From Anthoceros angustus (Eukaryota; Plantae; Anthocerotophyta), in contig MU008159.1 in the NCBI GenBank assembly GCA_010909165.1, positions 62,001 through 126,000 on the forward strand: a DNA stretch of 64,000 bases. The letters run 5' to 3'. The notes beneath the pieces were generated by a model, which saw only the letters and a program-made list of their open reading frames with translations, did no database searches and was not told the DNA's origin. A program made the translations under genes and the position numbers. Positions 1,555 through 29,214 of this stretch are shown piece after piece (positions within the stretch are counted from its first letter, which is position 1; each line of letters opens with the position of its first letter).

Positions 1555-2545
1555 GGCGAATGCCCCTCAGGTCTCTCCTGCCAGCTGATCGATCACTGGG
1601 CCGGTGGAGGAAGCAAGCGAGGAAGCGAAGTTTGCAGCAAGGCCAGGGCAGCGGATGCAGAGTGGAGAATGCTGGCAGCTCTGGGCCTTTTTATTGTGGA
1701 GAGAGCCCGTTGCCTGACATTGCCTGCCAGGCCGTGCCGTGCCGTTTGAATTCAGGCCCGGGCGCTTCACTCACACAAGCGCCTAGAAGGCCGAGGCGGG
1801 GCGGGGCCCCTTCTCTCTCAAACGGTCGGTTACTGTGACAAACAGTCTCGGAATATTACAAAAGAAACGCAAAAGCCTCCTGGTCGGAGGTCCTGGTCTG
1901 GCCGCCGCCGGCGCTAATATGTACTCTACATACACGTATGCGTGTGCAGCAGGTACATATGTATCCTGGAAGCTGGCCCGAGGGCCGAACCTCCGAGATT
2001 CTGCGAATGCTTTTACGTGATTGTTTCAAATAAAGGTATGTATTCTATGTAGGTATACCACCTAGGGGCGCGGCGCACCACACATAAATAAATATACATG
2101 TGTTAATTGCAAACTAGGTACACACACAAGTGATTTTCCTGCAATCCGGGTGCGGTGACAGCAAAAGAACAGAGAGCGAATTGCCGGAGCACGGCAGACA
2201 ACAAAACTCGCTACGGTGTTTGCGAAGTTCAGACGGGAGAGTAATGCAGGGCGCGACCTGCCCGGACAAGGAGGGTTGGATAGGAAAATTTCTGGCGATC
2301 AATTCTACGCATCTACGACCAGCTAAGCTTCAAGCCTACAACTTGAAGGCAGTCACTTGGTCGTCTCAGATGATGGAGCTGTGGATGTGGTAAGCCAGCA
2401 GAACTTGGGAGCGGAAGCAGGCAGGGGCTTAGCTTCCCGGGCTGGGCGGAGCGGGACGGAAGGCAGAGACCGGGGGGGAGAGGAATTTCGAAGCGGAAGT
2501 GAATTGGCTGGCTGGCTCTGTCGGCAGCGGCACGGCTAAGTTCAG

Positions 2546-3450
2546 TCACTCCATCCGTGACGCCTTCTTGTCCAGCAGCCGCTTTTCAGGCCACAGTTCA
2601 GTCTGCTTCTTGGACGCCTTCTGCACAACTTTGAGCACGTCTTCCGGTCGGAGAAACTCGCCGCTCACGGTCACTTTGTGAGTCTCATTGTTTACCTTGA
2701 AGGAGCTGATTCCTGCACAGCAGCAAAGCGGTACGGTGGCGATGAGGCGAGTGCAAGCCAGGGCCAGTTGCCAGGACGTAAGCGCTGGCTTGCAAGCTTG
2801 GAATTTACCGGTCATGTTGCTCAAAGCCCGCTTCACGCTCTTCTTGCAGCCCTCGCAGCACATGAGGCATTTGAGCTCCACTGTCTGCGACGAATACAAG
2901 TTTGACGACAAGAGCGGTTAAAAACAGCAGTGAGTGCGGCTGAGGACCGAGGGTCCAGAGAGGAGAAGAGAAGAGAATAGCCATGACCTCGGAAGGAAAG
3001 AAAAAAAACATGGACGACTAATACATGGATGCATTGCTACGATTTGAACTGCCAATCTCGCTGCTATTGCTGTTGCTATTGCTATTGCTATTGCTATTGC
3101 GACGCAAGTGATTCCAAAGCAGCTAAGCCTCGCTTACGGTTGTCCTCGGCTGCCTCGACGAGTGCTCCTCGCGGTGAGGCATCGGTTGAGGCTCCATCCA
3201 GTAGGCAGCTGACACAGGGTCGTAAGGTGTGTTGAAGAACTGCAGAAGCAGGCAGAGAGACCGTGGATGTCATCTCGCGAGCAGAAGCACTTGCAAGTTG
3301 CAGGCAGGCAGACTACAGCACATTGCATTGCATGCAACACAGGAGGTCCTAGAGTAGGCGCGGGCCCAGACGCGCGGCAGCAAAACGTGGAAGTCACATT
3401 ACCTGATAGACAGTCCAGTCATTGCTCAAACTTTCCCTCAATGTCGCCAT
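2546..3450 (-). CDS. HMA-domain protein (HPP type), paralog 2; tandem duplicate of 451-1554
   Basis: Exons 3450-3403, 3239-3138, 2884-2809 and 2712-2546: MATLRESLSNDWTVYQ|FFNTPYDPVSAAYW...|TVELKCLMCCEGCKKSVKRALSNMT|GISSFKVNNETHKVTVSGEFLRPEDVLKVVQKASKKQTELW. HMA domain is near-identical to paralog 1. Confidence 0.9.
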
Positions 3451-3804
3451 GCTGATGCCGCAGGTAGCAGGTAGCCTGGAGGGAGGCGAGGCCAAGGCGA
3501 CCACGATGCGACTCGAAACTCGAATGTCGGGACAGAAGTCGGGGGGTGAAGGCGAGTTGAGACGACGCTGTAGCGTAGCGAACACAAGGAGGCTTCGAGT
3601 GTGCGGCGCGGCTTCACATTACATAGTCTCTCGCAGAGCAGGACAGGACAGGGCAGGGGGCAGGGGGCAGGGAGCAGGGGACAGGGCAGGGCAGGAGGCG
3701 GGCAGGAGCGGGCAGGGCAGGACGGGCAGCCACCTGCCCGACTCTGCTGCCTGGCGCCGGCGGCATTGGCCTTCCAGGCAGGGCGCAGCCCGCCGCTCTT
3801 TATC

Positions 3805-3997
3805 ACCATCGCCATCGCCTCGGGAACCCACCTGATCCGATCCGACTCGACTCGACTCGACTCGACTCGACTCGACCCGTTCCCCGCCCCGACCCGACCA
3901 TCGCCATCGCCTCGGGAACCCACCGATCCGATCCGACTCGACTCGACTCGACTCGACTCGACTCGACCCGTTCCCCGCCCCGACCCGACCCGACCCG
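3805..3997. repeat. (GACTC)n microsatellite inside a ~90-bp tandem duplication
   Basis: Two copies of ccatcgccatcgcctcgggaacccacc...(gactc)n...gacccgttccccgccccgacccga. Confidence 0.85.
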
Positions 3998-4564
3998 GGA
4001 TGTTGCTTCTTCTGGACGCTTCTGCGCCGCTTCGCCCCACCTGTCTCTTGTCTGTCGCCTCCAGTCTCTCCCCTTCGCCGTCACATTCATCTGACACAGC
4101 CTTCGCATACACAGGCGCCATAATCACTCGTCTCTCCTCACTCATCACGCAGCTACAGTACACGCGCCCGGCCTACCTTCCTCCACACGCTTTACGGAAT
4201 TGCACCATTGCACCATTGTACATTGCACCCGAGATCACCCGATCACCCAAACCAATTTTCTTATTTTTCATTTTCTACGAACATTTTCTATGCCCCCGCG
4301 ACCGTGCCCGGACCCCCGGCCGGGGCCCAGGGAAAGGGTACGCCAGTTGGAGTCAGAGTCGGAGTCGGACAGTTTGACGGAACTCTTTATTACTCGTCCG
4401 TCTCGCTCCCTCCCTCTCTGTCTCACCCCATTCACAACGTTTGTTCTGTTCAACTGCTACCGGTACTGTACATCCTTGCAACTAGTCTGCACACTTATGT
4501 ACACAGAGCCCCAAGCTCCCTGCGCAATCGAATGCAATGCAATACGGGCCTTTCGGGCTTCTCA

Positions 4565-5353
4565 TCAGTTTGTATATACATGGGAATACCCAAACACTGG
4601 GCCAGATGAGTAGCCGGCGGAGGAATAGCCTGGGGTGTAGGCCAGTGAGGAGGTATGCAGAGTCTCACCCCTCCAGTAATCGGCTTTCCTTCCTGTCTTC
4701 CTCACTTTCTTCAACACCTCGGCGGGAGCCACGTTTCCAGTCACCGTCACCTTCTGATTGTATACATCCACGTCCACAGTTGCCACACCTGCACAGCTTT
4801 GCAACTTGGTATGTCACTTAACCAGTTGCTTGCCGATGCCATACACTAGGGCAGGGCCCAAACAGTACACCAGTTCGTAATGGATACCTTTCAACTTGGC
4901 AAGCTTCCGCATGATGACCTTGCGGGATCTTTCGGAGCGCATCTCCACCTTGAGCTCCACTATCTGCAACGCAACGCGGTCATGTGAGATGCGGAGGGGA
5001 AGGGCCCCTTCGGGGCGAGGCCCCCGCCCCCGCCCCCGGGAGCTGTGCCACCGCCACCGCATCATGGCCGCAATGTCACCACGTCACGTTGCCACACTTA
5101 CAGGGGAAAGCTGAGGCGCATCGGCAACGTAGGTGGAGGCGTGAGGCGTGCCATGGCCGTGATGCGCAAAGGCGGAGCCTGACGAGGAGCCGTAGAAGTA
5201 ATTTCGGTCACCCTGCGGACACCACAAGCAACACACTCCATTAAACTAGTCTACTCCATTGCATTCCCTTGGAAGCTCATCATCTCGTCCAGCGCTGTGT
5301 GTCACTGACCGGCAAAGCGGTAGCAAGACACGTACCTCGAAGAGAGTCCACAT
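4565..5353 (-). CDS. HMA-fold protein lacking the metal-binding cysteines (MRSERS)
   Basis: Exons 5353-5336, 5212-5102, 4963-4888 and 4788-4565 in frame: MWTLFE|GDRNYFYG...QLSP|IVELKVEMRSERSRKVIMRKLAKLK|GVATVDVDVYNQKVTVTGNVAPAEVLKKVRKTGRKADYW... Confidence 0.82.
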
Positions 5354-6439: not shown

Positions 6440-9400
6440 GGCGGGTGGCCCCTCCCCTCTTCAGTCTCCCACCTTCCACTCTCCGGGCCTTTCAACCTCA
6501 TCAGTTCGTCCACACTGGCCAACCAGGCTGCAGGTGGCTACCAGCTGGCATTCTGGCCGCGCCCTTACGGCTCGCTGTGTCAGGCTCTGTACGCAAACAC
6601 ACCTATGTACCTGTCTTGTTGCTAGGACAGCAGGGCATGTGAGTTGGTTGATGCAGGAAGTGGTAGCAGGGGAAGCTGGAGCCGGGGAAGCTGGAGCCGG
6701 GGAAGCCGGATACTGGAATTGGATCCGAATGCCGGATTTCACCGTCGAGTGAGCACGACCTTGGTTTACGGCATCTGAAGAAGAATATTTCTGTTTCTCT
6801 CCCGCTGTGCTTCCCGGGTAGCTAGCTGGCGGCTCCCGGCATGGCTGAGCTTCAGCTGCCTGCACTTGGCGCCAGGAGTGCTCTGCTGGCAGGGGTGCAG
6901 GAACCGGCTGATGAAGAAGTCGTGTGACTCATTGTGCGCTAGCACCAGGAGAAATAATTCAAGTGAGTGCCGTTGTGACTGCCGTGATCCCTCTTTGACT
7001 CACCGCATTTTTGCACTCCTGTCTTTATGAATCCAGATTGCTTTCAGCAGATATGCAGAATTATCCCAGGCTTTTTCCATATGCACCGGCAAGCTTGGGG
7101 ATCAATTGTGCTGTGTCTCTCAGAGGATCATAGATTGAAGTTCTAGAATTTGCGGCAAAAATCCGCAAGAACATCGAGGACCGAACCTCGCACTGCTAGT
7201 ACGTAGTGAAGACTTTATTGTCAATATGTGCCATCAATCTGCATGCAGGTGTGTGAAGCTGCGATCAGGCAAGCAACTTGTCACTTCTTCCTTCCTCCAT
7301 GCTCTTTCATGTTCGATAAAGGCTGAGATAAATCGCTGGATTGTAAACTCCTGGAAATCGCCTTCTAAGTGCTTCCAGATGGTAAAGTGCTCTGGCGTTC
7401 GCCCCAGCCACCTATTTGCGCCTAGGAGCTGGTTGGCTTTCATTGATTTGCATGTTAAATTCTGCCTCTTTACTGGATCAGGGATGTGAATCGGTAGCTG
7501 CCCTCTCCATTATCGTCACACATTTCTGGTGGCCAACTGGTTAGCTATCTGCTTAGCTATTCCACAGTTACCCCACTGGATAGCCACCAGTTAACCGGTA
7601 TTAGGGGTAGCTAACGTCAGTGGTGGTCAGCTCAAAGTACGTACGTCATTTGCCGATGATACAATATGCTGCCCCTTTGAAAGAGGCGGTAAAAGCTGTG
7701 TTTATGCAGTGAACTCTTCGATTGTTCCCACTGGCTGAGGCCCCAGATTAGGACGGCCAGTTAGCTAGGAACTGTCTGACGTTCAACTATCACTATAGAA
7801 CGGAGGATGCTAGGTTAGTGCCAATGGTATTTCTACAAGGACATTTCTTTCAGCATATTAGATCTGCTAGAGGACCTTGCAATAAAGGGAGAGTGGAGAC
7901 TCACGGCTAGTGGCAGGAGGAAGGAACCTCTCACCACTTGTTTTCATTCATGTCGGGATTGGGGGGTAGAGTGCAGCTGCCACTGGTCTTGATGTCTAGA
8001 GAGTTATCGAGTTGAGATCTGAAGGTTAGCTGATGACCGTGCCACTCTCTGCCTAGCACGCACTCTGCTTTCTCCTCCATCTTGAAGTGCAGGGGAAATG
8101 ACATAAAAGATGAATGTCCAGAAAATGGTACAGAGTCGGTGTCCAGGCCTGCTCTTAAGTGTCTGCTTTACGGACTGCCCTGCTCCGGCTTAGAGTACGT
8201 GTTGGCTGAAGCCATCGTCACCCCCGACTACTGTGCCTAACAGGCATCCCTTTGAGCACCTCTTCCATGGCGTGTCGCTGGCTCACCCTTGAAAGAAAGT
8301 ACTTCATTGTTCCAGCCATTTCTATTTACTTTTCGTACTTGGTGCAGGATGAAAATGGTAACCAGGAGAGAGATCTAGCTGATGCTCGATCCTGTCTTGA
8401 CAAACATAAAAAATGAGCCGTGTTTATCCTCGTAACTGCTAGCACGGAGGATGCATGAGGTATTCGTTTCTGACTGATATCACTGAAGTGGAACTTGCAA
8501 TTGAAGGAAGAGATGATGATTTATTGGCAATCCATGCGCAGACTTGGGAGGGCATCACAGTCCTGTACAAACCCGTCAAGATTATCTGTAGGCACAGAGA
8601 TACTCAAGCTAAATTGTATATGAGCACGTTTCCGAGGAAGGGAGCAGCTCCTAATTCGGTTGACTGAGAAAGCTGTAGGTCGACGATGTCCTCCTGATGC
8701 TTTCTTGCATGCACGGATGGGTGCTTGAGAAGTAGATAGGCCTGGTGGGTGATTTGCATGACTTCTGCCCCATGTATCTCGGTGAGTGTTTCCTACATAA
8801 AATCTTGTGGACACTCGCTTCAATCAATTGATGAGTCTGGTTGATTTGATTAGGTGCATCGATCACATAGAATCTAGGTAGTCCTCCCAAGGAAAGGTTC
8901 CTTGGAACTCCATAGTCAAGCGTTGTTGGGACCGATAAGTACTTAGATGGGGGGATATATATTCCCCGTCTCCGCAGTGTTTGCAGGACCGCCAGTGTAA
9001 GTGCCCTATGAGGTTAGTCTAGAGATTAAACTTCGATGTATATTTTAAAATATTTATATAAATTAAACTATAATATAAAGTCTCTGAATGCTCTAAAAAA
9101 ACAGAAATCTAGGTAGGTACCTAGTTAATGATTCAAATCCTCCGCACATTTGGTTCTTTTTTCCAATATATTTTTATTTATTTATTTTATAAATTTATTA
9201 CTGATTTTTATTTAAGTATATATTAGATAATACCTGGATAGTCTTAGTCTGAGAACTTTGAGAACACATGATCTTCTGCATTTTATTTTTAATATTTTAT
9301 CTCCTTATTTCAAATATACTTCTATATATGATTCATCTCAACCAAGTATTTAAATTTTTTTATTCATTTGATAAAATAATTATAAATTCAATTTTTTTGA

Positions 9401-9558
9401 AGTACTATAAAAATCAACTCAAAATTGTGATGAATTTCCTCCTGGATAAGCTATGTTTTCAAACTCTCTGCAAATAAAACCACATTATGATCACATGTAA
9501 TAAATATATTCAAAAAATTAATTTATATAAAACATGAGAATTATATAATGTAGTTTAT

Positions 9559-11682
9559 CTAACTTGCACTAGAAGCTTCTTCACTCAATGCAACTTCTGA
9601 TGCTGTGGGTTCACCAAGAGGTATGAGACCTCCCTTAAACCTTTGTTTTGATTCCTCCTACATAAGAACAAAGCTTAATATTCTATCAATGGAGAAATAA
9701 AGCTATTAGGTACATAGAGCAACACACCACTAGTCCAGTGCACATGTATTCATAATCAACACTTCAATCACACGTTTAGTCAAAACATGTCATCTATAGT
9801 TTAATACAGTATTGAAGTGGTCCACATTTATCACTATCCCGCTATTTATGTGCTTACAATAAAAATATGATACCTGTAATTCAAAACTATCTTACATTTT
9901 TAATGCGCTTTCTGTAAATGTGAGATGTCCGACTTGAACTAGTCTTCCGCTTGCGATTCTTAGGCTTGGGTAGATTACGTCGGCGTTTGCGTTGCTTTCT
10001 TTTATAGCTCATGACTTTTCTTTTTACCTTTCGTCTCCCACTAAACATTCTTTTTCCCCGCACTTGTACTTTTCTACCTGTTCAATTCCAAATTTTTAAT
10101 AAAATAAATGCTATCATGTATCATGCAAATTTAAGTGGACATGATGTATGCACACACCTTGTTTGCGAAGAGGAGCTCGTCTCCTCTTCCTTGTTTGCGT
10201 TTCAATAAGATCATCTGTAGAAACACCTTGAGAAGTAGTGCCTTTCACAAGAGTTTCCACTTCATGATGAGGTACATGTGCATGTCTCTCTTCATGGTCA
10301 TGTTCATGAGCTTCCAACTCGTGATTCTGAACAATTCCTCTACTTCCATGTAGACCATGAGAAGCATGGCTTCCGGTATGTGATCCTCCATGTGATCCAA
10401 GTGGTAATCCATGACTACGGAGACTTGCATGACTCCCTCCATGAGAACCATGATCTGAGCCGGCTCCATCAACTAAAGTTGTGGCTTGCCCCTGCAAAAT
10501 CCAAAGCAAAATTGAGGTTAAGCCATGCTTAACCTCAAAAGAACCAGTCTTTAAAATATTAATGTATTTGGTTTACTCAGTACAATTAGCTACCATGTTC
10601 TGGAAAGGATATAAAATTTGCTTGGAATACATCACTGTGGGTTGATCATCTTGAATATAACTATGAATATTTCCTTTTTGTGCTCCGAACATATGCCCCG
10701 TCAAAGTTTCTCTTATCAATGTACATGGTATAGGGCATTCTAAGGCTTGATCAGACCCATTTGAAGATCCATGACCAAGTAACTCACACTCCTTACTAGA
10801 ACATTCAAATTCATGACAAGGTGATTCAATACCACCATTTTGTGGAGCTTTAAGGAGGTCATTAGTGGTTCCACCTGCATCAACTATGAGTTGTTGGGAA
10901 CATGTTTCGACGAGGATGGGAGAGTCATTACTACAGCCTTGATGATCTGGACCTTCATCTTCTCCTGATGATCCACATTGATTTTGTTGTGACCTACATT
11001 GACATGTGCTATTTTTGCCTTGTTCATTACAGACAGTCACATCTTCCAAGCATTCCTTACATTCATTAAGTCCATCATCTTCTAGTACTAAGGGTGGTCT
11101 CTCAATAGGGTTGAAGGCATCGTTGAATGTTTCTATGTTATTAGCTCTAAGATCAATAGTTGGCTTGACACAAGAATAACATTGTGCAGGGTCTTGTTCA
11201 TTAGGTTTTGTAGAATTTGTAGCTCCAGCATTCAAGTTACAAAGCAAGTGCTTCGACTCAAATTGTTGGGAGCTATTTTGAATAGATGCGGCAATCATTA
11301 TGCCGCCTATTTGTTTGGGGTTATCTTGATTTACATAATCTACAGATTCTTTCATGTTACAACTCATACTTTTGCTGTTTAGTTGTACACAAACAGATAG
11401 TCCCATTTGGTCTTCTTTAGTGCCAAATGAATTAGATTCATTTCGATTATTTGTTTGATATAAAGTTTTATTAGGTGCTTCATCAATAGACTTACTTTCA
11501 TCTATACATATACCCAATTCATTGGTAGAGGGAAAAGGAGACTCTTCTTTTTCCTTTTCATCCTCAATGTCGCTAGATTTTTCTGCAACTGAGTGATTTA
11601 AAGGCTCTCCATTTGGATTTTTCACAAATCGACGGCCAACTCCCAATCCCATAGTAAGTAGACTCAGAAAGATCTCAGCCAT
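9559..11682 (-). CDS. Unrecognised ~567-aa protein: acidic/Cys-containing N-terminus, His-rich GSH repeats, Arg/Lys-rich protamine-like domain
   Basis: Exons 11682-10594, 10491-10158, 10077-9896 and 9657-9559, all GT-AG and phase-compatible. Exon 2 contains GSHGGSHASLRSHG...HEHDHEERHAHVPHHE. Exon 3 encodes GRKVQVRGKRMFSGRRKVKRKVMSYKRKQRKRRRNLPKPKNRKRK. The last exon is less certain (alternative stop at 9887). Confidence 0.65.
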
Positions 11683-11934
11683 AGCAATTGAAAAGAATTT
11701 TCTTTGTGATGTTATTACCCATTTCAATCTTTATACAATCCTAACATTATATATATATATATATCAGAAAATATAATCAAAGAGTACTTTTTAAGATGAG
11801 AAAAATAAATTATTTTAATTGAAAATATCATTAAATCCTAAAACTATGATATCAAATTATAAATCTACTCTTGAAATTCCTTCCAAAATTGCAACTGTCT
11901 ATTCCAAGAAGAATGATATTTGAATCTCTCACTT

Positions 11935-12890
11935 TCATCTTGACTTGTAATACATGAGGAAAGGGGTTACCTGAATTAGCTTGATTGTTCAACAACTCCA
12001 TTCTTGATTATATAAGTGACCATATAAGATTATATGTAGACATTAACAACAAGATATGAAAGGATATATATTTTTAGGTATTTTAAAAAAATAGGAGTAT
12101 TATTAACCTTTTTGGTGACTTTTCGTCTTTTGGCTGAACTTTGTTTCCAACGCTTAACACGTTTCTTGCTGTTTGCCCTAGTTTTCCTTTTAGGTGCAAC
12201 TTTTGTGCGATACGCTATCCTTCTACGCTTTCTAGATCTTGCATTTTTCTTCTTTCTCCTAATCTTCTTTCTTTTCTTCTTGCGCTTTTTTTTCTTATGA
12301 CCCCTTCCCTTTCTCCACCTTTGTGTAAACTTCTTCTTACGAACTCTTCTCACAACCTTAGTATAGCTTCTTTTTCGTTTCCTATTGTTGGTCACCACTG
12401 GTTGTCTCCTAATAACATAAGCTCGAGTAGCAGCTGCTTTATCTTTTTTAATCTTTTCTTCTTTACTAAGATTGTATTTCCTGTAACTCAAAGTCAATCG
12501 GAATTTTCCTTTGTTCTTGGTTATTTTGTTGGCGGAAACCATTCGCTTTAATTGCTGTGCTAGGTGTTTGCTAAAAGTTTTGGACAATTTGCCCTTGTAC
12601 AAATCAGCGACGTTCTTGGTGATTGCATGTTGGCTACTACCAGCCTTTTGCTTGAGTCCCAAAATTGCATCGCGTATCATGCAAGAATAGGAGGGATGAT
12701 CTGGTCGGAGCCGCGGTTTTCGTTGTTTTTGTCCATGAATTGTTCCATCCAACGCTGTCTGAAGCCCATCTTGATGGAGACCTTGATGCACTTTATCCTC
12801 TACATGGTTGTGACCTTGTTGCTCACCATGGATAGGCCCTGTACGAGGTGGAGAGCTTGCCTCCGGTGGTAGCACCACCTCCGTGGCCAT
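11935..12890 (-). CDS. Linker histone H1-like protein with Arg/Lys-rich protamine-like C-terminal tail
   Basis: GH1/H15 winged-helix domain HPSYSCMIRDAILGLKQKAGSSQHAITK...LAQQLKRMVSANKITKNKGKFRL, an MATE start, and a very basic tail. A probable terminal intron at 12107-11971 gives the last exon VTPFLMYYKSR*; the unspliced ORF ends at 12030. Confidence 0.85.
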
Positions 12891-13823
12891 TCCCTGCGGA
12901 GGTTGCTACATTTGGTAGAAGGGAAGAGGAGGAAAAGGACGAGGACCAAAGGAAAAAGTGTGGGAAGCAAAGAGAAGGAAATTGAGCTGGTGCTTGTAAA
13001 GGTGCAAAAACATGATTGTTTTTATTTTGCTGGTGCCTAGTTATAAAACAGTGTGCGGCTAGCGCGGTAACCGTCTGCCCAAAATTCCAAAATGCCTATA
13101 CACGAAAGACCTAAAATTGTACCCACCCGAGCCGACGTGGCGGGGCAATGCGCATATCAACATCAACATCCTCCCTCTGTTTTCACAGTATATACCTGCA
13201 TGTACAGAAAGTTGGTACCATGGTGTCTTGCACGTACTGCCGGTGACCGGTCCCCGTCGCAGCAGGTGATGCTGGTGTATCGGTCGGGTCGGCGCGGGCT
13301 TATGAGCTGCCTACGAGTCTGGAAGAGAGGTGGGGTGAGCTGCGTTGCACCACAACTGTGCTGCGCTGAGCTTCAGAGATGGCGGACGCAGGTGGGGCCG
13401 GTCGTGAGATTCTCCAGTCAGTCTATGCCTCACGGCGCAGCTTTGAGGAAACTTCACGCCATCTTATTACTCTCCCCCCTCCTCTCCCACTGCAATGCAG
13501 CTAGTGCTGAGTGCCCATCCTCTTGCTAGTTAGGTACCTCGAGCTGGTTCCTCTCACCTGGAGGCCTTCTGAACACCAGCTTTCCAGAACGTTCCCCTAC
13601 CCCCCACCCCCCCCATCCTTGTCACTAATTTCGATTCCATCCCGACGGCGAGCACGACCACTTCTTTTCAGATTGTGCGCCGTCTCCATGCATCCGCGGA
13701 CTGGCATTGCCACAATAACTTTGTGAACGCGAAGGCCTGCTTCCTCTCTTCTCCTTGCTTCCGCATCAGTTGCTGAATCAGATCCGCCGCCGGCCCAAGC
13801 CAGGGCTTTCAGCTCCAGCCAGC

Positions 13824-14685
13824 ATGGTTGGCTACAGCGAGGTATGCTGCTTTCCGGCCTTCAATTTTCTGCGCTCGCTATCGGTGTCGGTAGGGTTGCG
13901 CATTTGGTGCAAATTGTGCAATAACCTTTGTGCAATGCAGGATTTCTTCGTGAGGAACTGGGATCGATACTACGGTCCGTTTAACAATTGTGGTAATCAG
14001 TGTATACCCCCTCCTCCCCCCCCAAAGAAGGAGGAGAAGAAAGAGGAGAAGAAGGAGGAAAAGAAGGAGGAGAAGAAGGAGGAAAAGAAGGAGGAGAAGA
14101 AGGAGGAGAAGAAGGAGGAGAAGAAGGAGGAAAAGAAAGAGGAAAAGAAGGAGGAGAAGAAGCCCGATCCACCGAAACCTAAGGTGCCTTGCTCTCAATT
14201 TGATGTTTGCGCCCTGGCCTTGACTTTGTTTTCTCTCAGGACCTCAATTTGTGCGATGCCATGCGATGCAGCCAATCAACGTCAAAGTGCGCATCTGCTG
14301 TCAGAAATGTGTCAAGGATCTCACCTACGCTCTCTCTGGAACGCCTGGTAGGCATCCTATCCTCGAGACTCCGATCCCATCCGATCGAGTTTAGCGCGAT
14401 TGTTTTTTTCTGACCGTCTCCAGGTTGCATTTTTCTTTCTTATCACACGGTGCTCACAGCTGTGGAAATCCTCCATGTGCAGGAATTGAGAGCTTCAGCA
14501 TCAACATATCCGGGCAGAAGGTATCTGTGGTTGGAGCAAGTTTGAAGCCCGACGAAATTCTCAAGATCATCAAGAAGGTTAAGAAGACTTCTGAGTTGAT
14601 ACCCGATCCGCCACCACCACCGAAGAAGGAGGAGAAGAAGGACGACAAGAAAGGAGACGATAAAAAAGGTGATGCCAAAAAATGA
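13824..14685 (+). CDS. HMA-domain protein with poly-Pro and (KKEE)n tract
   Basis: Exons 13824-13841, 13941-14183, 14272-14347 and 14483-14685: MVGYSE|DFFVRNW...PPPPPP(KKEE)n...PKPK|PINVKVRICCQKCVKDLTYALSGTP|GIESFSINISGQKVSVVGASLKPDEILKIIKKVKKTSEL... Confidence 0.85.
14025..14163 (+). repeat. Coding 12-bp repeat (AAGAAGGAGGAG)n = (KKEE)x11
   Basis: Visible directly; synonymous AAA/AAG and GAA/GAG variants occur between units. Confidence 0.92.

Positions 14686-18823: not shown

Positions 18824-29214
<10,391 letters not shown>

What the first reader, a model, noticed from the sequence alone, without database searches (positions are those of the whole stretch)
9559..12890. Two-gene candidate protamine/sperm-chromatin locus: an H1-derived protamine-like gene next to a globular-domain-less basic protein
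Seen: two co-oriented genes ~250 bp apart, both encoding long Arg/Lys blocks and both far more AT-rich than their neighbours. Known: protamine-like sperm nuclear basic proteins derive from linker histone H1 by Arg enrichment and later loss or cleavage of the winged helix; animal protamine/transition-protein genes are clustered; Marchantia has an H1-related protamine-like gene. Inference: this is a clustered sperm chromatin-condensation module in a flagellate-sperm land plant, possibly showing two stages of the H1-to-protamine transition side by side.
Basis: partly seen in the sequence, partly recalled or inferred. Interest (0 to 1): 0.85.

Follow-up and report, generated by a model that had tools for sequence, protein, structure and literature searches.

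The report
Conserved H1-variant plus orphan gene pair
A hornwort-like plant carries a real linker-histone H1 variant with an unusually Arg/Lys-rich, protamine-like tail. Beside it lies an unknown gene with a short basic block, and the pair is kept together in a second, very distant genome, but a role in sperm could not be tested here.

Summary
Two co-oriented minus-strand genes lie in the most AT-rich island of the window.

**Gene 1 (12890-12030)** is a true linker histone.
- Pfam Linker_histone scores 3e-13, and the AF2 model matches H1.0/H5 globular domains at rmsd about 1 A.
- Its C-tail is an outlier among 97 relatives: 53% K+R, Arg/(K+R) 0.44, 9% Ala+Pro, and no S/TPXK motif.
- It sits on a long branch with a single partner (P0001).

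**Gene 2 (11682-9559, four exons)** is not a basic protein overall.
- It is an orphan with four parts: an acidic Cys-bearing region, a His-rich region, a basic block of about 72 residues, and an acidic Ser-rich end.
- It shows no detectable relation to H1 or to any known family.

**Conservation.** The same gene pair, with the same exon layout and intron phases 0/1/0, occurs on one contig of another organism. That organism is so distant that synonymous sites are saturated.

**What is not shown.** Sperm-specific use is plausible by analogy with the H1-derived protamines of Marchantia. No RNA run holds the locus, and the Marchantia sequences were out of reach. The idea of "two stages of H1-to-protamine" is not supported.

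**Verdict.** This is a candidate first hornwort protamine-like H1 with a conserved novel neighbour. Its function is untested.

The parts
12030..12890 (-). Gene 1: H1-variant ORF, 286 aa, with no intron in the globular domain
   Evidence: ORF list. Pfam PF00538 scores 3.3e-13. The orthologue is P0001 on L001 at 976-1917.
12699..12890 (-). Gene 1 N-terminal region (aa 1-64): near-neutral, with some His and Pro, poorly conserved
   Evidence: pI 6.6. 30% identity to P0001 over this part.
12495..12698 (-). Gene 1 GH1 winged-helix globular domain (aa 65-132)
   Evidence: Pfam. AF2 pLDDT 84, with three helices and a beta hairpin. Foldseek best hits are H1.0 and H5 globular domains, TM 0.74/0.84, rmsd 1.0-1.2. 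pN 0.17 against pS 0.84 versus P0001.
12108..12494 (-). Gene 1 hyper-basic C-terminal tail (aa 133-261), ending in the conserved KRRKVTK
   Evidence: 51-53% K+R, R/(K+R) 0.44, 9% A+P, no [ST]PX[KR] motif. This is outside the range of 97 relatives' tails. The motifs RWRKG..KKKKR..RKKIR and KRRKVTK are shared with P0001.
12030..12107 (-). Uncertain 3' end of gene 1: either 25 further codons of aromatic/hydrophobic residues or the start of an intron (GT at 12107-12106)
   Evidence: The frame stays open in both species and the translated ends are weakly similar (41 of 2000 shuffles reach the score). GT donors are present in both species.
13069..13075 (-). Single match to the DUO1 consensus RRCSGTT, 185 bp upstream of the gene 1 ATG
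   Evidence: Motif taken from PMC6290024 and scanned. The window density is 0.5 per kb and L001 has no match in the same position, so this is weak evidence.
11683..11749 (-). Conserved leader of gene 2, just downstream of a TA-rich, TATA-like run at 11748-11764
   Evidence: It is the only conserved block in the intergenic DNA (local alignment). TATA-like sites in both species. (TA)8 found by TRF.
11675..11722 (-). Upstream ORF of 15 codons whose TGA overlaps the gene 2 start (ATGGCTGA); same length and position in L001
   Evidence: Read from the sequence and the alignment.
10594..11682 (-). Gene 2 exon 1 (363 aa): conserved N-terminal peptide MAEIFLSLLTM, then an acidic region with 19 Cys
   Evidence: pI 4.5. 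BLASTP against the L001 exon 1 gives 6e-17, 36% over aa 1-137. dN/dS is about 0.29 over that part. No hit in Pfam, PDB, the Atlas or the 5.8-billion-protein database.
10158..10491 (-). Gene 2 exon 2 (111 codons plus 1 nt). It holds a His-rich segment (about 10455-10264, 17 His), the conserved KGTTSQGVSTDDL (10245-10207), and the start of the basic block (10191-10158)
   Evidence: Splice sites GT..AG, intron 1 in phase 0. blastn match 10245-10208 to L001 3758-3795.
9896..10077 (-). Gene 2 exon 3: basic block, 60 full codons, 50% K+R, no acidic residue
   Evidence: The L001 counterpart at 4206-4357 is 48% K+R and has the same phase-1 entry and an RKRIK end.
9559..9657 (-). Gene 2 exon 4: acidic, Ser-rich end with the conserved SEEASSAS, then the stop
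   Evidence: blastn 9596-9557 against L001 4903-4941, 87.5% identity. Translations.

Best explanation
The locus holds two real, independently promoted, co-oriented genes that have stayed adjacent over a very long time.

Gene 1 is a replication-independent linker-histone H1 variant. Its winged-helix domain should seat it on the nucleosome and linker DNA like any H1. Its tail has been remodelled into a much denser, Arg-enriched polycation without the Ala/Pro spacers and CDK sites of somatic H1. Such a tail should neutralise and compact DNA more strongly, as the protamine-like (PL) H1 relatives of animal sperm do and as the H1 precursors of Marchantia protamines do.

Gene 2 is a lineage-restricted, fast-evolving protein. 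It has a basic block of about 72 residues (a DNA-binding or nuclear-targeting block) flanked by acidic regions and preceded by a His-rich stretch.

The most likely setting for both is chromatin condensation in spermatids. Under that reading, gene 2 is an accessory or precursor protein rather than an H1 derivative.

Shown: gene reality, the H1 fold, the tail composition, conservation of the pair and of its exon structure, and the AT-rich, CpG-poor island.

Inferred: stronger compaction, tissue restriction, the sperm role, and any functional link between the two genes.
For: - GH1 domain: Pfam 3.3e-13. AF2 pLDDT 84 with H1.0/H5 as best structural matches. The invariant GH1 residues are kept.
- Tail: outlier against the tails of 97 relatives in K+R, Arg share, Ala+Pro and S/TPXK motifs.
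- Divergence: a long, well-supported branch with one partner only among 1.84 billion representatives. The next relatives are ordinary bryophyte and other streptophyte H1s at 45-50% identity.
- Promoter: none of the three plant histone promoter elements searched (Oct, Hex, Nona; consensus sequences from my own knowledge) upstream of gene 1.
- Pair conservation: the pair is conserved on L001 with collinear matches, the same four-exon gene 2 and phases 0/1/0, although dS is saturated.
- Island: AT-rich and CpG-depleted in both species.
- Expression: no RNA run was listed for the locus, while earlier notes of this scan report RNA for other loci of this genome. That is consistent with restricted expression but does not prove it.
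- Precedent: Marchantia protamines come from male germ-specific H1 precursors (title of D'Ippolito 2019 as cited). MpPRM is an Arg-rich, DUO1-dependent, sperm-specific gene.
Against: - There is no expression or protein evidence of any kind.
- Lys still outnumbers Arg in gene 1 (R/(K+R) 0.41-0.44), so it is far from a true protamine.
- The single DUO1-type motif upstream of gene 1 is not conserved in L001 and is expected by chance about one time in seven.
- Gene 2 is mostly acidic, and its basic block could simply be a nuclear or nucleolar localisation signal.
- Adjacency alone is weak evidence of shared function. From my own knowledge, hornwort genomes are highly syntenic.
- Orthology to the Marchantia male H1s was not tested.
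- The host's identity as a hornwort was not verified here.
Confidence: 0.45

Rival explanations
1. Gene 1 is a specialised H1 variant used outside the male germ line, for example for compaction in spores, dormant or stressed cells, or for heterochromatin. Gene 2 is an unrelated neighbour whose basic block is a nuclear or nucleolar targeting signal.
For: - All the evidence for an H1 variant fits any compaction role equally well.
- Lys exceeds Arg.
- No conserved DUO1 motif.
- Gene 2 is net neutral and has no known domain.
- Hornwort synteny is generally high (own knowledge), so adjacency may be passive.
Against: - From my own knowledge, known stress or variant plant H1s keep Lys-rich tails with little Arg. 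None of the 97 relatives' tails combines this charge density with this Arg share.
- In the 975 bp and 1.8 kb of flank that L001 offers, nothing else matches the window, so the conserved unit seen is exactly the two genes.
Confidence: 0.33
2. Gene 2 encodes a secreted or membrane-targeted Cys- and His-rich protein with a cationic C-terminal part, such as a precursor of a cationic peptide or a gamete-surface protein. It would then not be a chromatin protein.
For: - The N-terminus has a 13-residue hydrophobic run followed by G-V-G and RR.
- Exon 1 has 19 Cys.
- The layout of an acidic pro-region followed by a cationic end resembles peptide precursors (own knowledge).
Against: - The n-region is acidic, and L001 has an Arg inside the hydrophobic run.
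- The N-terminal 18 residues are far better conserved (16 of 18) than the rest, which is unusual for signal peptides.
- Cys number is not conserved: 19 against 8.
- The AF2 model is unstructured, pLDDT 31, though from a single sequence.
Confidence: 0.12
3. The two ORF sets are one transcription unit. Gene 1 would splice from the GT after KRRKVTK into downstream exons. In the window its last exon could be the short frame that ends at the TGA overlapping the gene 2 ATG. Alternatively the pair is read from one dicistronic RNA.
For: - GT donors follow the conserved KRRKVTK in both species.
- In the window an AG at 11743/11742 would join in phase 0 to the 'uORF' frame (read).
- The two genes are co-oriented and close.
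Against: - L001 has no AG at the matching place, and its only nearby AG is out of phase.
- Gene 2 has its own TATA-like run and a conserved leader.
- The gene 1 frame stays open and weakly conserved beyond the donor.
Confidence: 0.07
4. The ORFs are decaying or chance ORFs in an A-rich, AT-rich island and make no functional product.
For: - AT-rich, CpG-poor DNA.
- No RNA evidence.
- No relatives of gene 2 in databases.
Against: - ORFs of 286 and 369 codons stay open in DNA of 35-40% GC.
- Both genes are intact in a second genome with saturated dS.
- GH1 pN is 0.17 against pS 0.84.
- Exon boundaries and phases are conserved.
Confidence: 0.03

Closest known systems
Male germ-specific H1 precursors of Marchantia polymorpha protamines, including MpPRM (Mp3g14390). 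Sources: D'Ippolito et al. 2019 J Biol Chem, known to me by title and abstract only because the paper is not held; Higo et al. 2016 and 2018.
   Same: Both are land-plant H1-family proteins with an Arg-enriched basic region. They come from a bryophyte with flagellate sperm. Both are replication-independent variants.
   Different: - Expression, cleavage and C-terminal modification are unknown here.
- The hornwort-like gene sits on its own long branch. Of the 20 hits I named, none was from Marchantia; the other 130 of the 150 best GH1 hits are unnamed.
- No conserved DUO1 motif.
PL-type (protamine-like) sperm nuclear basic proteins of animals, for example the bivalve PL-I proteins with a winged helix (own knowledge; the classification is cited).
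   Same: An H1-type globular domain is joined to a tail with about 35-50% Lys+Arg and raised Arg.
   Different: It belongs to a different kingdom, so any likeness would be parallel evolution. Presence in sperm is not shown.
Canonical plant somatic H1 (the nearest hits come from Mesotaenium, Physcomitrium, Sphagnum, Calypogeia, Selaginella and angiosperms).
   Same: GH1 is 45-50% identical and keeps all invariant residues. The layout is tripartite.
   Different: - Tail K+R is 53% against a median of 32%.
- R/(K+R) is 0.44 against 0.09.
- Ala+Pro is 9% against 31%.
- There is no S/TPXK motif.
- The wing sequence differs: KNKGKFRL where relatives have KVKxSFKL.
- There is no intron in GH1.
Mammalian protamine P2 precursor and transition protein TP2 (own knowledge), as analogies for gene 2 only.
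   Same: His-rich, potentially metal-binding segments are combined with a strongly basic DNA-binding block. P2 is made as a longer precursor that is trimmed.
   Different: There is no sequence relation. Gene 2 is far longer, with a 363-aa acidic first exon. Processing, metal binding and nuclear location are all untested.

Membership tests
Linker histone H1/H5 (Pfam PF00538) | GH1 domain recognisable by sequence above the curated threshold | tested here: met
   50.1 bits against a cut-off of 22.4, E 3.3e-13, aa 65-132. 1082 H1-type hits with the GH1 profile.
Linker histone H1/H5 (Pfam PF00538) | Winged-helix fold: three helices plus a beta hairpin | tested here: met
   AF2 pLDDT 84, H14-25, H33-43, H52-65, E69-72, E75-78. 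Best PDB matches are H1.0 and H5 globular domains at rmsd 1.0-1.2 A.
Linker histone H1/H5 (Pfam PF00538) | Tripartite layout: short N-tail, GH1, long basic C-tail | tested here: met
   64 aa, then 68 aa, then 129 or more aa with pI 12.
Canonical (somatic) plant H1 | Lys/Ala/Pro-rich tail with S/TPXK sites and little Arg | tested here: not met
   R/(K+R) 0.44, A+P 9%, no motif; outside the range of the relatives.
PL-type sperm nuclear basic protein | H1-related protein with about 35-50 mol% Lys+Arg and raised Arg (criterion from own knowledge) | tested here: inconclusive
   The protein up to aa 261 is 34% K+R and 14% Arg. The tail is 51-53% K+R and 22% Arg. This is borderline for the whole protein and met for the tail.
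PL-type sperm nuclear basic protein | Expressed in spermatids and present in sperm chromatin | not testable with these tools
   No RNA run was listed. The one related run laid nothing on the locus.
Marchantia-type H1-derived protamine precursor | Orthology to MpPRM (Mp3g14390) and its two male-specific H1 paralogues | not tested
   The Marchantia sequences were not obtainable. D'Ippolito 2019 is not held.
Marchantia-type H1-derived protamine precursor | Post-translational cleavage that releases small Arg-rich peptides | not testable with these tools
   This needs mass spectrometry of sperm nuclear proteins.
True protamine (P type), considered for gene 2 | Small protein in which Arg dominates (about 30 mol% or more; own knowledge) | tested here: not met
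   The gene 2 model is about 567 aa and net neutral. Even exon 3 alone is 27% Arg and 23% Lys. It could qualify only if a basic fragment is cut out, which is unknown.
H1-derived protein that has lost its globular domain, considered for gene 2 | Residual similarity to H1 (GH1 or tail) | tested here: not met
   hhalign of GH1 against exon 1 gives probability 0.1%. No tblastn match between gene 2 pieces and gene 1 at E below 1.
GH1-HMGA and GH1-Myb plant proteins | AT-hooks (GRP core) or a Myb domain beside the GH1 | tested here: not met
   Linker_histone is the only significant Pfam hit; a marginal HemN_C match (E 0.098, 13.2 bits against a cut-off of 24) is below threshold. There is no GRP in the translated sequence.

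The most novel reading that the evidence does not exclude
The pair is a co-regulated sperm-chromatin module, and gene 2 is a new class of plant protamine or transition-protein precursor that does not derive from H1. Its acidic first exon would mask the basic block until it is cleaved near the conserved KGTTSQGVSTDDL. The His-rich stretch would bind metal, as in mammalian P2 and TP2 by convergence. The conserved overlapping uORF would delay translation, as protamine mRNAs are delayed in animals.
Probability: 0.15. Interest if true: 0.8.

Novelty: new member of a known kind. Interest (0 to 1): 0.5.

Why it matters
Sperm nuclear basic proteins are described for liverworts, but I found no paper describing them for hornworts. 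Four papers hold both words and none treats hornwort proteins.

If gene 1 is made in spermatids, it gives a second bryophyte lineage in which H1 has moved towards a protamine. That would make a direct test possible: was the shift inherited from the common ancestor, or did it arise in parallel?

The conserved orphan neighbour would then be a candidate for a wholly new sperm chromatin component. Anthoceros can be transformed (PMC8717380, listed), so reporter and knockout tests are feasible.

Tried and rejected
- **RNA evidence.** The look-up of sequencing runs listed no RNA holder, and laying run X1 gave zero contigs. Expression and splice sites therefore remain models.
- **Word-based protein searches.** The whole of gene 1 and its GH1 region each found only P0001. 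Gene 2 exon 1 found nothing.
- **Metagenome scans.** Scans with gene 1 and with the gene 2 exon 1 alignment found no relative.
- **Exact look-ups.** The window's own ORFs are not on record. P0001 and its neighbour gene occur on one contig only.
- **Gene 2 characterisation.** No Pfam family for any exon, no usable Atlas hit, no PDB hit, and an uninformative single-sequence AF2 model with pLDDT 31.
- **Atlas on the gene 1 tail.** Only weak H1-like leads at 0.76.
- **DUO1 motif.** One unconserved site, so it was rejected as evidence.
- **Paralogues.** None in the window. The matches at 14023-14175 are a simple GAA-type repeat in another gene.
- **RNA families.** None in 8500-13500.
- **Flanking synteny.** None beyond the pair.
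- **Literature.** D'Ippolito 2019 is not held.
- **Joined model.** Each exon was searched and measured separately by reference, and the joined step was left out.
Full report
**What is there**

On the minus strand, an ORF runs from ATG 12890 to TAA 12030 (286 aa). About 350 bp further on, a second gene starts at ATG 11682 and ends at TAG 9561-9559. The whole stretch 9000-12900 is the most AT-rich part of the 64-kb window:
- GC is 0.35, against 0.45-0.64 in every other 2-kb bin.
- CpG o/e is 0.40-0.49, against 0.7-0.8 elsewhere.
- Third codon positions are also AT-rich.

One correction concerns gene 2 and is given below.

**Gene 1 is a genuine linker histone**
- Pfam Linker_histone matches aa 65-132 at 3.3e-13, 50 bits against a cut-off of 22.
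- An AlphaFold model of aa 55-140, built on 30 GH1 sequences, has pLDDT 84 and the three-helix plus hairpin winged helix.
- Its best matches among solved structures are the globular domains of H1.0, H5 and H1 on nucleosomes, with TM 0.74/0.84 and rmsd 1.0-1.2 A.
- All residues invariant in 30 plant-type GH1 domains are kept. The wing and the second helix carry lineage-specific changes.
- The domain lies in one uninterrupted ORF.

**The tail is what makes gene 1 unusual**

Residues 133-261 are 51% Lys+Arg, with Arg/(Lys+Arg) 0.44, only 11 Ala+Pro residues, and no [ST]PX[KR] site. I compared this with the C-tails of 97 of the 150 best GH1 relatives found by an exhaustive HMMER scan of 1.84 billion representatives.

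| Measure | Gene 1 tail | Relatives' tails |
|---|---|---|
| Lys+Arg | 53% | maximum 43% |
| Arg/(Lys+Arg) | 0.44 | median 0.09 |
| Ala+Pro | 9% | median 31% |

Only one other protein, P0001, shares the pattern. The basic block is not a DNA microsatellite. It carries motifs shared with P0001: RWRKG, KKKKR..RKKIR and KRRKVTK.

**Relatives of gene 1**

With the GH1 profile, only P0001 scores below 1e-30. The next hits are ordinary H1s at 45-50% identity. The ones I could name come from Mesotaenium, Physcomitrium, Sphagnum, Calypogeia, Selaginella, conifers and angiosperms.

In a GH1 tree, the window protein and P0001 pair with SH-aLRT 99 on a long stem. The path to the nearest other row is 1.67, against a median tip length of 0.23. 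So this is a divergent streptophyte H1 lineage, not the canonical H1.

The three plant histone promoter elements I searched for (Oct, Hex, Nona; sequences from my own knowledge) are absent upstream. That fits a replication-independent variant.

**Gene 2**

Using GT..AG sites and the orthologue, I model four exons. The intron phases are 0, 1 and 0.

| Exon | Window | L001 | Length |
|---|---|---|---|
| 1 | 11682-10594 | 2285-3151 | 363 aa |
| 2 | 10491-10158 | 3464-3842 | 111 codons + 1 nt |
| 3 | 10077-9896 | 4206-4357 | 60 full codons |
| 4 | 9657-9559 | 4842-4943 | 32 aa |

The model is not confirmed by RNA. The product has four parts:
- A highly conserved N-terminal peptide (16 of 18 residues identical), followed by an acidic region with pI 4.5 and 19 Cys.
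- A His-rich stretch with 17 His and GSH-type repeats.
- The conserved peptide KGTTSQGVSTDDL, followed at once by a block of about 72 residues at about 50% Lys+Arg.
- An acidic, Ser-rich end, SEEASSAS.

Counted exon by exon, the protein has 70 K+R against 73 D+E. It is therefore not a basic protein. It is a protein with one basic block.

No exon matches any Pfam family. Exon 1 has no relative in the 5.8-billion-protein set, the Atlas or the PDB. A profile comparison with GH1 gives nothing. tblastn shows no similarity between the gene 2 basic exon and the gene 1 tail. I therefore find no support for the idea that gene 2 is an H1 that lost its globular domain.

**The pair is conserved**

P0001 lies on a 6.7-kb Logan contig, L001, from another organism. 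Directly downstream and co-oriented is the gene 2 orthologue, with the same exon layout and phases. The divergence between the two organisms is deep:
- Synonymous sites are saturated.
- GH1 has pN 0.17 against pS 0.84.
- The first 137 residues of gene 2 give dN/dS of about 0.29.
- The rest of both proteins keeps composition rather than sequence.

The AT-rich, CpG-poor island is also shared. Nothing in the short flanks of L001 matches the window. Both genes are therefore under selection, and the pairing is old. From my own knowledge, however, hornwort genomes are highly syntenic, so adjacency by itself does not prove a shared function.

**Function**

The fold predicts ordinary H1-type binding at the nucleosome dyad and linker DNA. 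From my own knowledge of these proteins, a tail with higher charge density, more Arg and no spacer or CDK sites would be expected to compact DNA more tightly and with less cell-cycle control.

The known precedent in land plants is Marchantia. Its protamines are cut from male germ-specific H1 precursors (D'Ippolito et al. 2019, known to me by title and abstract and cited). MpPRM (Mp3g14390) is an Arg-rich, DUO1-dependent gene expressed late in spermiogenesis. By analogy, spermatid chromatin condensation is the most likely role, and I put it at about 45%.

The evidence I could gather on that specific point is thin:
- No RNA run is listed for this locus and the one related run gives nothing. Earlier notes of this scan report RNA support for other loci of the same genome. 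That is compatible with restricted expression but proves nothing.
- A single DUO1 consensus site (RRCSGTT, from PMC6290024) lies 185 bp upstream of gene 1. It is absent from L001 and expected by chance about one time in seven.
- Lys still exceeds Arg.

A role in another compaction setting, with gene 2 as a mere neighbour, remains a serious rival at about 33%.

**Open structural points**
- Gene 1 3' end: after the conserved KRRKVTK, both species have GT donors. Both also keep the frame open through very AT-rich DNA, for 25 codons in the window and 53 in L001. The translated ends share Y[IF]LSY ... VV.[VI][YF]I, and 41 of 2000 shuffles reach that alignment score. So the protein may end in a short aromatic/hydrophobic peptide, or an intron may start there.
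- Gene 2 leader: gene 2 has its own TATA-like run and a conserved leader of about 65 nt. The leader holds a 15-codon uORF whose stop overlaps the main ATG, identical in length and position in both species. This points to separate transcription and possibly translational control.

**Host**

Earlier notes of this scan call the genome hornwort-like. I did not verify this. I can say only that the GH1 is of streptophyte type and that its nearest relatives are mostly from bryophytes.

Earlier first-reader notes on these same coordinates (s1-655672, s1-655707) describe gene 2 as tripartite and gene 1 as an Arg-rich H1 without a GH1 intron. My tests agree with both.

**Verdict**

Calling gene 1 an H1-derived, protamine-like gene is supported by structure and composition but not by expression. 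Reading gene 2 as a basic H1 derivative, and the locus as two stages of one transition, is not supported.

This is a candidate first hornwort PL-type H1 with a conserved orphan partner. I class it as a new member of a known kind, of moderate interest until antheridial expression or sperm proteomics is available.

Noticed in passing
window 11675-11722 (minus strand); L001 about 2238-2292: A 15-codon upstream ORF in the gene 2 leader starts at a strong-context ATG and ends at a TGA overlapping the main start codon (ATGGCTGA). Length and position are identical in both species, but the peptide is not conserved. It may be a translational brake.
   Followed up: partly
window 12030-12107 (minus strand); L001 1741-1917: Beyond the hyper-basic tail, the H1-variant frame continues into an aromatic/hydrophobic peptide that is weakly similar between species (Y[IF]LSY ... 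VV.[VI][YF]I). It is either a real C-terminal sticker-like peptide or intron read-through.
   Followed up: partly
window 9000-12900; L001 1-5000: The gene pair sits in a sharply bounded AT-rich, CpG-depleted island (GC 0.33-0.35, CpG o/e 0.34-0.49) inside DNA of 50-60% GC. The island is conserved in both genomes, introns and spacers included.
   Followed up: partly
window 22939-26874 (minus strand) and 21631-22548 (minus strand): About 10 kb from gene 1's upstream side lie a 1311-codon uninterrupted ORF for an SNF2-family chromatin-remodelling ATPase (SNF2-rel_dom 4.5e-90, Helicase_C 9e-28) and a Myb-domain ORF. These are further chromatin or transcription genes nearby.
   Followed up: no
window 13755-14351 (plus strand): An ORF next to the gene 1 promoter encodes a proline run followed by a long (KKEE)n repeat. 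It comes from a GAA-rich simple repeat that also gives spurious K/R-rich hits in another frame.
   Followed up: no
proteins P0002-P0005: The top-scoring GH1 hits include proteins with two to seven tandem GH1 domains, for example a 746-aa protein with seven. This multi-GH1 architecture is unrelated to this locus but is unusual.
   Followed up: no
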